A stretch of DNA of 63,743 nucleotides, the filler included, from Octopus bimaculoides (Eukaryota): assembly GCF_001194135.2 (NCBI RefSeq). It is 9 parts of 6 records of this genome, joined end to end, with 100 filler letters (N's around TTAATTAATTAA, not from the genome) between each part and the next. Parts side by side here need not be neighbours in the genome. Positions count along the whole stretch, not along the records: positions 34,531 to 41,825 come from NC_068985.1; 8 more parts are not named here. One strand, given 5' to 3'. Under the pieces are notes generated by a model. The model did no database searches. It saw only the letters and a list, made by a program, of their open reading frames with translations, and had not been told where the DNA came from. This document shows, one piece after another, positions 40,632 through 41,200 of this stretch; positions within the stretch are counted from its first letter, which is position 1; every line of letters starts with the position of its first letter. Both the position numbers and the translations under genes were made by a program.

Positions 40632-41200
40632 TAATAAATTCAAAAAGGGATAGGAATATTTTACAAGAATTTTATCAGGAAGCCAGTGTGTAAAAAAATT
40701 CATAAGGGAAATTTCTATTCCCAAGAATATAATTATTGGTTTATATTTATATAAGGGGCATTACTACAGAATAATGCCACACACTTGACTTCCCAAAAGA
40801 AACACATTTAGTACCGAATGCGAGGGAAAACAACCAACAGAAGAAGACCAACTTTCTTTTAAATAACTCAACTATGTATCGACCGATTTCGCGATTACTA
40901 GAATGAATCTAGACTCCGCTCATCAGCATAGTATTGTTCAAGAAAACATATATAAATAAACAGAATTCTCACCTTACCAAAAACGAACATTCTACGTATC
41001 CGACGAAGCAAAGGGAATGAAGTTTATCTGTATAAAGCTTCATCAAAGAAGCTGGAATACTGAATTTCTTATTCCTGTCTCAACACGTGCACCAAAACAA
41101 CCCAGTAGTATTCCCGCTTCTTTGATGAAGATTTATAACCGAAATGTATTTTAAATTAAGGTCTCAAAATAATTTTTGGATGATTTCGATTTTGCATGTT
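40630..41200 (-). mobile_element. Penelope-like element / retrozyme-type terminal repeat remnant
   Basis: Contains the hammerhead, two degenerate hammerhead-like cores (TTGATGAAG...) and a 31-bp inverted repeat. No RT or GIY-YIG coding was recognised. Class is inferred from the known PLE-hammerhead association. Confidence 0.45.
40871..40932 (-). ncRNA. Type I hammerhead ribozyme (dimer-type stem III)
   Basis: Minus strand reads ACUAUG-CUGAUGA-G[CGGAGUCUAGAUUCAUUCUAGUAAUCG]C-GAA-AUCGGUCGAU-A^CAUAGU. All core nucleotides are present. Stem I is ACUAUG/CAUAGU (6 bp). Stem II is 4 bp + 3x3 internal loop + 5 bp. Stem III is AUCG/CGAU. The cleavage triplet is AUA. Confidence 0.85.

What the first reader, a model, noticed from the sequence alone, without database searches (positions are those of the whole stretch)
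40871..40932. Intact hammerhead ribozyme with a self-complementary stem III, in apparently non-coding DNA
Seen: the minus strand has the complete core C3UGAUGA9, G10.1-C11.1, G12AA14, A15.1-U16.1 and H17=A. The predicted cut is AUA^ between 40877 and 40876. Stem I is a perfect 6 bp (ACUAUG/CAUAGU) and may extend by AAC/GUU after a 3x3 loop. Stem II is long (GCGG/UCGC, 3x3 loop, CUAGA/UCUAG, UUCAU loop). Stem III, AUCG-GU-CGAU, has only a 2-nt loop, but the 10-mer pairs fully with a second copy via central tandem G-U wobbles. Established: type I hammerheads with short palindromic stem III cleave as dimers and occur in Penelope-like elements, retrozymes and newt satellite 2. Inference: this is a retrozyme/PLE-derived, possibly still active ribozyme, with a much longer stem II than the minimal PLE hammerheads.
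Basis: partly seen in the sequence, partly recalled or inferred. Interest (0 to 1): 0.88.

Follow-up and report, generated by a model that had tools for sequence, protein, structure and literature searches.

The report
Solitary intact type I hammerhead ribozyme motif
A complete self-cutting "hammerhead" RNA motif sits on the minus strand of repeat-rich, non-coding animal DNA; it is almost certainly a real example of a very common class, probably a stray single copy left by a small retroelement, so it is genuine but ordinary.

Summary
Minus strand 40932..40871 carries every invariant hammerhead position (CUGAUGA, G10.1-C11.1, GAA, A15.1-U16.1, H17=A), a perfect 6-bp helix I, a 4-bp helix II extended by a 5-bp hairpin, and a near-palindromic helix III. 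The predicted cut lies between 40877 and 40876. It is the only such motif in the piece. Chance gives about 1e-10 per base per strand: about 1e-6 for this piece and about 0.5 per 2.5-Gb genome, or about 0.02 once the distal helix II is counted. A covariance model built from four experimentally validated animal retrozyme hammerheads ranks it first (18.6 bits, E about 5e-4). Rfam's own models give no hammerhead match.

The piece holds no second copy, no tandem unit and no RT or GIY-YIG remnant, so retrozyme or PLE origin stays an inference. No relatives could be retrieved, because the collections do not cover this animal genome. Dimer action has no nearby partner. Helix III matches in size a coral hammerhead that cleaves as a monomer.

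Verdict: a new member of a known kind, of modest interest.

The parts
40927..40932 (-). Helix I, 5' strand (ACUAUG, positions 2.6-2.1)
   Evidence: Sequence; pairs perfectly with 40876-40871; descriptor hit; CM R1 alignment
40920..40926 (-). Catalytic core C3-A9 (CUGAUGA)
   Evidence: Sequence; invariant columns in four validated hammerheads matched
40891..40919 (-). Helix II: GCGG/UCGC (G10.1-C11.1 at the base, G.U on top), 3x3 internal loop AGU/UAA, distal 5-bp CUAGA/UCUAG, loop UUCAU
   Evidence: hairpin folds at -8.6 kcal/mol, more stable than 95.6% of random inserts
40888..40890 (-). Core G12 A13 A14
   Evidence: Sequence; CM alignment
40878..40887 (-). Helix III AUCGGUCGAU (A15.1...U16.1): 3 bp plus GGUC loop, or 4 bp plus a 2-nt loop; self-complementary with a central tandem G.U
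   Evidence: self-duplex -8.4 kcal/mol, against coral -13.4, mussel -13.3, axolotl -10.3 and -4.6
40877..40877 (-). H17 = A; predicted scissile bond between 40877 and 40876
   Evidence: Position in the motif; cleavage itself not tested
40871..40876 (-). Helix I, 3' strand (CAUAGU, positions 1.1-1.6)
   Evidence: Sequence
40865..40870 (-). 3' side of the helix I internal loop (UGA) and possible closing GUU
   Evidence: Constrained fold closes AAC/GUU; only 3 bp, so weak
40933..40938 (-). 5' side of the helix I internal loop (AAU) and possible closing AAC

Best explanation
This is a genuine, sequence-intact type I hammerhead ribozyme motif encoded on the minus strand. It has the canonical animal architecture: 6-bp helix I, 4 bp of helix II up to its first loop, and a short near-palindromic helix III. 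If the minus strand is transcribed, the RNA should fold into the three-way junction and cut itself by 2'-O transesterification between A40877 and C40876, leaving a 2',3'-cyclic phosphate and a 5'-OH. The internal loops, 6 bp up helix I and 4 bp up helix II, sit where loops 1 and 2 of canonical type I hammerheads make their tertiary contact. Helix III (3-4 bp) is as long as that of a coral retrozyme hammerhead that works as a monomer, so cleavage in cis without a partner is plausible. Its most likely origin is a solitary ('monomer') copy left by a hammerhead-carrying retroelement, either a non-LTR retrozyme or a non-autonomous PLE derivative. It is not part of an active tandem array. Shown: the motif, its statistical significance and its fit to validated hammerheads. 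Inferred: transcription, cleavage, and descent from a retroelement.
For: The complete core and three helices can be read from the sequence, and this is the only descriptor hit in the piece. The chance rate is 1e-10 per nt per strand, or 1.3e-6 for the piece, and the distal helix II adds p=0.044. A CM built only from the coral, mussel and two axolotl retrozyme hammerheads, all shown to self-cleave (sequences, alignment, model), puts 40871-40932(-) first at 18.6 bits and E=4.5e-4; the next hit scores 8.4 bits at E=0.56. The canonical metazoan type I layout of 'Helix I 6 bp, Helix II 4 bp, short palindromic helix III' is stated in PMC4209133. The coral hammerhead, with a 10-nt helix III, cleaves at about 0.8 per min as a single motif. 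Nearest-neighbour energies favour an alternative fold (-18.4 against -12.7 kcal/mol; P(HHR) 5e-5), but the four validated hammerheads show the same behaviour, with P between 1e-6 and 3e-3. Dispersed monomer copies of retrozyme families are documented (bioRxiv 10.64898/2026.07.22.740005). The surroundings are AT-rich (35% GC) and non-coding, as described for animal retrozymes.
Against: Rfam's curated hammerhead models give no match even at E<=10. No second copy, tandem unit or duplicated flank exists in the piece. No RT or GIY-YIG remnant lies nearby. No related sequence was recovered anywhere, so there is no covariation or family evidence at all. A control with the piece's own SINE-like repeat also found nothing, so those negatives carry no information. 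At whole-genome scale a motif meeting the bare descriptor is expected about 0.5 times by chance. The predicted lowest-energy fold sequesters C3-U7 by pairing with AUCGG of helix III.
Confidence: 0.6

Rival explanations
1. Chance look-alike: an AT-rich, Gb-sized genome throws up a sequence that satisfies the hammerhead descriptor without ever having been a ribozyme.
For: The bare descriptor (6/4/4 bp plus core) is expected about 0.5 times per 2.5 Gb. Rfam hammerhead models do not score it. There is no family, no covariation and no second copy. The MFE fold is not the hammerhead fold.
Against: Only 1.3e-6 is expected in this piece. The extra 5-bp distal helix II adds p=0.044, giving about 0.02 per genome. 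The internal loops fall at exactly the canonical 6-bp and 4-bp distances. It is the top hit of a CM trained on validated hammerheads. In invertebrate genomes that carry them, real type I hammerheads number in the thousands (about 5000 in mussel).
Confidence: 0.13
2. Domesticated single-copy ribozyme: a hammerhead retained for a host function, such as 3'-end or intron processing of a non-coding transcript. It might work together with the very stable 107-nt hairpin about 100 nt upstream on the same strand. This would be analogous to the conserved intronic hammerheads of amniotes.
For: The copy is solitary yet has a fully intact core and perfect helix I. A strong hairpin lies at 41031-41137 (z=-6.3) on the same stretch. 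Domestication of retroelement hammerheads is established in amniotes (PMC6155905).
Against: No conservation or expression data could be obtained. An inverted repeat folds equally well on both strands and may simply be a small foldback element. The hairpin's only Rfam hit is far below threshold (29.5 against 68 bits). Recent insertions are also intact without any selection.
Confidence: 0.1
3. Member of a real tandem retrozyme array, or of a PLE pseudo-LTR, whose other units or ORF are hidden by assembly collapse or gaps or lie beyond the piece's edge.
For: The scaffold has three N gaps. Short-read assemblies collapse PLE and tandem structures (PMC8557442). The piece ends 890 nt upstream of the motif. 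The 1.15-kb segment carrying the motif is bounded by (TA)n on both sides, and (TA)n is a preferred target of some PLE clades.
Against: Unique, non-repeated sequence runs 850 nt upstream and 240 nt downstream of the motif with no duplicated unit. That excludes the usual 170-400-bp tandem units at this locus. No RT or EN signal is present. (TA)n tracts recur about every 1.2 kb in this piece, so flanking by them is weak evidence.
Confidence: 0.1

Closest known systems
Canonical type I hammerheads of invertebrate non-LTR retrozymes (e.g. Acropora millepora Amil224, Mytilus galloprovincialis Mg353; Cervera & de la Pena 2020, PMC7229834)
   Same: Type I topology; identical core; 6-bp helix I; 4 bp at the base of helix II; helix III of 8-10 nt that is self-complementary (coral ACAGUACUGU against AUCGGUCGAU here); low-GC non-coding surroundings. 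A CM built from these finds the site.
   Different: Those lie in tandem repeats of about 220-390 bp and give circRNAs; here there is a single copy with no repeated unit. Their helix II ends in a 5-nt loop. Here an extra 5-bp hairpin is inserted, turning loop 2 into a 3x3 internal loop (AG(U)...(U)AA against coral AGAAA). H17 is A rather than C. The centre of helix III is G.U rather than a perfect palindrome.
Minimal hammerheads of Penelope-like elements (Cervera & de la Pena 2014, PMC4209133)
   Same: Type I; G10.1-C11.1; long helix II; palindromic 15.x/16.x region; proposed dimer action; found in invertebrate genomes in huge numbers.
   Different: PLE min-HHRs have helix I of 4-5 bp, an unpaired nucleotide between A9 and G10.1, little or no helix III, and sit in pLTRs next to an RT/GIY-YIG ORF. 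None of these features is seen here.
Newt / axolotl satellite-2 hammerheads (HHR_Amex1/2)
   Same: Type I, 6-bp helix I, short palindromic helix III, possible double-hammerhead.
   Different: The amphibian helix III is 1-2 bp and needs a dimer, while here it is 3-4 bp. The amphibian motifs sit in 330-350-bp tandem satellites.
Conserved intronic hammerheads of amniotes (Rfam Hammerhead_HH9/HH10) and Schistosoma Sm-alpha hammerhead (Hammerhead_1)
   Same: Single or dispersed type I motifs in animal genomes, thought to derive from retroelements.
   Different: No Rfam hammerhead model matches this site. No tRNA-like Pol III head lies nearby as in Sm-alpha. Conservation could not be tested.

Membership tests
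Hammerhead ribozyme (class) | Core C3 U4 G5 A6 N7 G8 A9 ... G12 A13 A14 | tested here: met
   CUGAUGA at 40926-40920 and GAA at 40890-40888
Hammerhead ribozyme (class) | A15.1-U16.1 pair, H17 (not G) at the cleavage site, G10.1-C11.1 | tested here: met
   A40887-U40878, A40877, G40919-C40891
Hammerhead ribozyme (class) | Three helices around the core | tested here: met
   6 bp, 4+5 bp and 3-4 bp. Nearest-neighbour energy prefers another fold, but it does so too for four validated hammerheads
Hammerhead ribozyme (class) | Match to the curated Rfam covariance models (Hammerhead_1, _3, _II, HH9, HH10) | tested here: not met
   No hammerhead family listed at E<=10 on 7.3 kb or on 171 nt. This is probably the cost of the 29-nt helix II, but I could not verify that
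Hammerhead ribozyme (class) | Match to a covariance model of experimentally validated animal type I hammerheads | tested here: met
   R1: 18.6 bits, E 4.5e-4, full-length model match, best in the piece. The model rests on only four sequences and a rough calibration
Hammerhead ribozyme (class) | Site-specific self-cleavage | not testable with these tools
   Needs an in vitro transcription and cleavage assay
Canonical metazoan type I hammerhead | Open helix I; helix I 6 bp and helix II 4 bp up to the interacting loops; short palindromic helix III | tested here: met
   Sequence against the description in PMC4209133
Canonical metazoan type I hammerhead | Conserved loop 1 / loop 2 nucleotides for the tertiary contact | tested here: inconclusive
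   U follows helix I on the 3' side, as in coral and axolotl. The helix II internal loop reads AG.../...AA like coral loop 2, AGAAA. That is only a four-sequence comparison, and the loop is interrupted by a hairpin
Non-LTR retrozyme (animal) | Tandem repeats (at least a dimer) of about 170-400 bp, each with a type I hammerhead | tested here: not met
   One copy only; no direct repeat of the unit or flanks. Solitary 'monomer' derivatives are described
Non-LTR retrozyme (animal) | Low GC (<45%), non-coding | tested here: met
   35% GC; no domains. The whole piece is AT-rich, so this has little discriminating power
Non-LTR retrozyme (animal) | Expressed as self-paired linear and circular RNA | not testable with these tools
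   No transcriptome available
Non-LTR retrozyme (animal) | Multi-copy family in the genome | not testable with these tools
   The source genome is not in any searchable collection. Protein-database detours failed, and so did a control with the piece's own SINE-like repeat
Penelope-like element pLTR hammerhead | Located in a pseudo-LTR next to an RT / GIY-YIG ORF | tested here: not met
   No RVT or GIY-YIG signal in six frames of 39925-41778. The piece ends at 41825
Penelope-like element pLTR hammerhead | Minimal architecture: helix I 4-5 bp, extra nucleotide between 9 and 10.1, helix III absent or 1 bp | tested here: not met
   6-bp helix I, no bulge, 3-4-bp helix III
Double (dimeric) hammerhead | Self-complementary helix III able to form an extended intermolecular helix | tested here: met
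   10-bp self-duplex with tandem G.U, -8.4 kcal/mol
Double (dimeric) hammerhead | A second copy on the same transcript or nearby | tested here: not met
   None in the 7.3-kb piece

The most novel reading that the evidence does not exclude
A single-copy hammerhead retained by the host animal as a cis-acting processing signal. My recollection of the SINE-like repeats suggests the animal is a cephalopod; that was not tested. For example, the ribozyme could define the 3' end of a non-coding primary transcript that also carries the very stable 107-nt hairpin 100 nt upstream. That would be an invertebrate counterpart of the amniote intronic hammerheads, with an unusual helix II in which the loop-2 tertiary contact is made by an internal loop.
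Probability: 0.06. Interest if true: 0.65.

Novelty: new member of a known kind. Interest (0 to 1): 0.3.

Why it matters
Type I hammerheads are already known by the thousands in invertebrate genomes, where they mark retrozymes and Penelope-like elements. One more intact copy therefore adds little by itself. It would matter more in three cases. First, if the source species (possibly a cephalopod) turned out to have a family of such motifs that nobody has described. Second, if this solitary copy were conserved and transcribed, which would point to domestication outside amniotes. Third, if the helix II variant, with an internal loop plus extension in place of loop 2, were shown to support fast cleavage, which would widen the descriptors used to find hammerheads. 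The Rfam miss is a practical reminder that the curated models overlook canonical cores with long helix II insertions.

Tried and rejected
1. Rfam cmscan on the piece and on 171 nt around the site gave no hammerhead family. The only hits were low-complexity miRNA look-alikes on microsatellites.

2. Searches for a second copy, a tandem unit or a duplicated flank (TRF, repeat finder, word-7 blastn) found none.

3. Searches for a PLE ORF (Pfam on six-frame translations of 39925-41778) found nothing: no match to a reverse-transcriptase or GIY-YIG family, and the only two matches (E about 0.2) are noise.

4. Relatives by DNA pattern: IMG/VR gave 0. JGI metagenomes gave one match in a GC-rich contig with no helix II, which I rejected as chance.

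5. Relatives through the protein database, using concatenated six-frame translations. The hammerhead +-130 nt gave none and the rest of the 1.15-kb segment gave none. A control with the piece's own SINE-like repeat also gave none. These negatives say nothing about copy number.

6. Exact-ORF look-ups for the two longest neighbouring ORFs were not on record.

7. A Sm-alpha-like SINE context was checked: no tRNA-like gene, and no B box near the motif (the single 1-mismatch match lies at 35332-35342, at chance expectation).

8. An Athena/Terminon-like telomeric context was checked: no telomeric repeats.

9. The idea that the alternative MFE fold (CUGAU pairing with AUCGG) disqualifies the motif was rejected, because validated hammerheads show equally low predicted occupancy.

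10. The literature search for hammerheads in octopus or cephalopods found nothing specific.

Full report
**The observation**

The minus strand from 40932 to 40871 reads ACUAUG CUGAUGA GCGG-AGU-CUAGA-UUCAU-UCUAG-UAA-UCGC GAA AUCG-GU-CGAU A CAUAGU. This is a complete type I hammerhead.
- Helix I is open-ended and is a perfect 6 bp (40932-40927 with 40876-40871).
- The core C3-A9 is CUGAUGA.
- Helix II starts with G10.1-C11.1.
- G12 A13 A14 follow, then A15.1...U16.1 closing helix III, and H17 is A.
- Beyond helix I lies a 3x3 internal loop (AAU/UGA) and a possible 3-bp closure, AAC/GUU.
- Helix II is 4 bp (the fourth a G.U), a 3x3 internal loop, a 5-bp distal helix and a 5-nt loop.

A descriptor I wrote finds only this site on either strand of the piece.

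**Is it more than chance?**

I sampled 14.4 million sequences conditioned on the CUGANGAG anchor, using the piece's first-order Markov composition. A motif at least this good (6/4/4 bp, G10.1-C11.1, A15.1-U16.1, H17) occurs at 1.0e-10 per nt per strand. That gives 1.3e-6 expected in this piece and about 0.5 in a 2.5-Gb genome. A direct 30-Mb simulation agrees in order of magnitude. The descriptor does not credit the distal helix II. Only 4.4% of random 21-nt inserts make helix II as stable, so the genome-wide expectation falls to about 0.02. Chance is therefore unlikely, though not absurd if the scan covered whole large genomes.

**Model-based tests**

Rfam 15 lists no hammerhead family here, even at E<=10 and even when only 171 nt are searched. 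This is a real negative for 'member by Rfam's models'.

As an independent test I took the four animal retrozyme hammerheads whose self-cleavage was shown experimentally: coral Amil224, mussel Mg353, and axolotl Ax353 and Ax330. Their sequences are in the supplement of PMC7229834. I aligned them, supplied the hammerhead structure, built a covariance model and searched the piece with filters off. The site is the top hit over the whole model, with 18.6 bits and E about 4.5e-4. The runner-up scores 8.4 bits at E 0.56 and lacks the core. The alignment shows where the score is lost: 25 nt where the model expects 9 in helix II. That probably also explains the Rfam miss, but I could not test this directly.

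**Folding**

ViennaRNA's lowest-energy fold is not the hammerhead. CUGAU pairs with AUCGG and extends helix I (-18.4 against -12.7 kcal/mol; occupancy of the hammerhead helices about 5e-5). The same calculation on the four validated ribozymes gives occupancies of 1e-6 to 3e-3, with analogous competing pairings. The energy model ignores the core's non-canonical pairs and the tertiary contact, so this does not count against activity. The helix III self-duplex is predicted at -8.4 kcal/mol, which lies between axolotl Ax330 (-4.6) and coral or mussel (-13.4, -13.3).

**Comparison with known animal hammerheads**

PMC4209133 describes canonical metazoan type I motifs as having helix I of 6 bp and helix II of 4 bp that interact through their loops. 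Helix III is 1-2 bp capped by a small palindromic loop. The present motif has internal loops at exactly those 6-bp and 4-bp distances. Its helix II internal loop reads AG(U)...(U)AA, like coral loop 2 (AGAAA) with a hairpin inserted. A U follows helix I on the 3' side, as in coral and axolotl. This is only a four-sequence comparison and is suggestive at best.

The coral helix III, ACAGUACUGU, has the same 10-nt layout, and that ribozyme cleaves at about 0.8 per min as a single motif. Dimerisation is therefore possible here but not required.

What sets it apart is that it is canonical.

**Context**

The piece is an AT-rich, microsatellite-laden eukaryotic scaffold with three N gaps and SINE-like repeats. 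From memory only, those repeats resemble an abundant octopus SINE; I could not test that.

Around the motif there is no ORF over 45 aa. No Pfam family matches in six frames of 40629-41778. In 39925-40600 there are only two noise-level matches (E about 0.2, to unrelated families), with no reverse-transcriptase or GIY-YIG signal. There is no tRNA-like head, and no B box near the motif, and there are no telomeric repeats.

There is no second hammerhead, no tandem unit and no duplicated flank. At this locus it is therefore not a tandem retrozyme and not next to a recognisable PLE. The 1.15-kb unique segment that carries it is bounded by (TA)n tracts on both sides. Some PLE clades prefer (TA)n targets, but such tracts recur throughout the piece, so I give this little weight. 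Dispersed monomer copies of retrozyme families are documented in vertebrates.

**Relatives**

None could be obtained.
- A pattern scan of IMG/VR found nothing.
- The single JGI metagenome match is a GC-rich sequence without a helix II.
- I tried to reach other copies through ORFs in the protein database, using concatenated six-frame translations. The hammerhead region gave nothing and the rest of the segment gave nothing.
- A positive control with the piece's own SINE-like repeat also gave nothing. The database evidently does not hold this organism's non-coding ORFs, so these negatives are uninformative.
- Covariation, copy number and orthologous conservation, which are the decisive evidence, remain untested.

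**Conclusion**

The most likely reading (about 0.6 as a whole) is a genuine, intact type I hammerhead present as a solitary copy left by a hammerhead-bearing retroelement. I put about 0.85 on it being a true hammerhead-derived sequence. If transcribed, it could cut itself between 40877 and 40876, possibly as a monomer.

Three rivals remain: a chance look-alike (about 0.13), a domesticated single-copy ribozyme (about 0.1), and a hidden tandem or PLE context lost to assembly (about 0.1). It is a new member of a very well known kind, with a minor structural twist in helix II, and its interest is modest.

Noticed in passing
window 41031-41137 (both strands): Near-perfect inverted repeat with 31-nt arms (94% complementary) and a 45-nt spacer. 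It folds into a 107-nt hairpin at -42.2 kcal/mol, z = -6.3. It lies about 100 nt upstream of the hammerhead on the minus strand. The arms begin and end with TA, so it could be a tiny foldback/MITE-like element or a miRNA-type precursor. The only Rfam hit is weak (mir-2985, 29.5 against 68 bits).
   Followed up: partly
window ~37875-38090 and ~39268-39475 (+): Two diverged copies of a SINE-like repeat (GGCGAG..GAATCGTTAGCGCGC..GTTCAAATTCC..GACTTTGCCTTTCATCCTTTC..GTCGATAAATTAAGTACCAG). From memory it resembles an abundant octopus/cephalopod SINE. A six-frame protein search found no relatives, so the organism stays unconfirmed.
   Followed up: partly
window 34603-34789 vs 35200-35386: About 78% identical copies of another dispersed repeat in inverted orientation.
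   Followed up: no
window 35637-35899: A 263-nt region that is 73% self-complementary (a large imperfect palindrome), overlapped by mirror-image ORFs on both strands.
   Followed up: no
window 38091-38246 vs 38327-38480: A 156-bp direct duplication (90% identity) flanking a (TTA)31 microsatellite. The second copy runs to within about 50 nt of the 579-nt N gap (38531-39109).
   Followed up: no
window 40595-40628 and 41779-41822: (TA)n tracts bracket the 1.15-kb unique segment that carries the hammerhead. Some Penelope-like clades target (TA)n (PMC8557442), but TA tracts are frequent across the piece, so this may be coincidence.
   Followed up: partly
window 40903-40907 vs 40937-40940 (-): The terminal loop of helix II (UUCAU) could form 4 bp (UUCA/UGAA) with the 5' flank of helix I, giving a pseudoknot-type helix I / helix II contact like those described for many hammerheads. 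It competes with the AAC/GUU closure, and a 4-nt match is easily chance.
   Followed up: no
window 40883-40887 vs 40922-40926 (-): The core nucleotides CUGAU can pair with AUCGG of helix III, giving the predicted lowest-energy (inactive) fold. A similar competing pairing is seen in the validated coral hammerhead. It may act as a folding switch or may be incidental.
   Followed up: partly
window 34531-41825 generally: Rfam E-value mode returns dozens of miRNA-family 'hits' (mir-297, mir-3149, mir-1277 and others) that all sit on TA/TG/CA microsatellites and fall far below gathering scores. These are low-complexity artefacts.
   Followed up: yes
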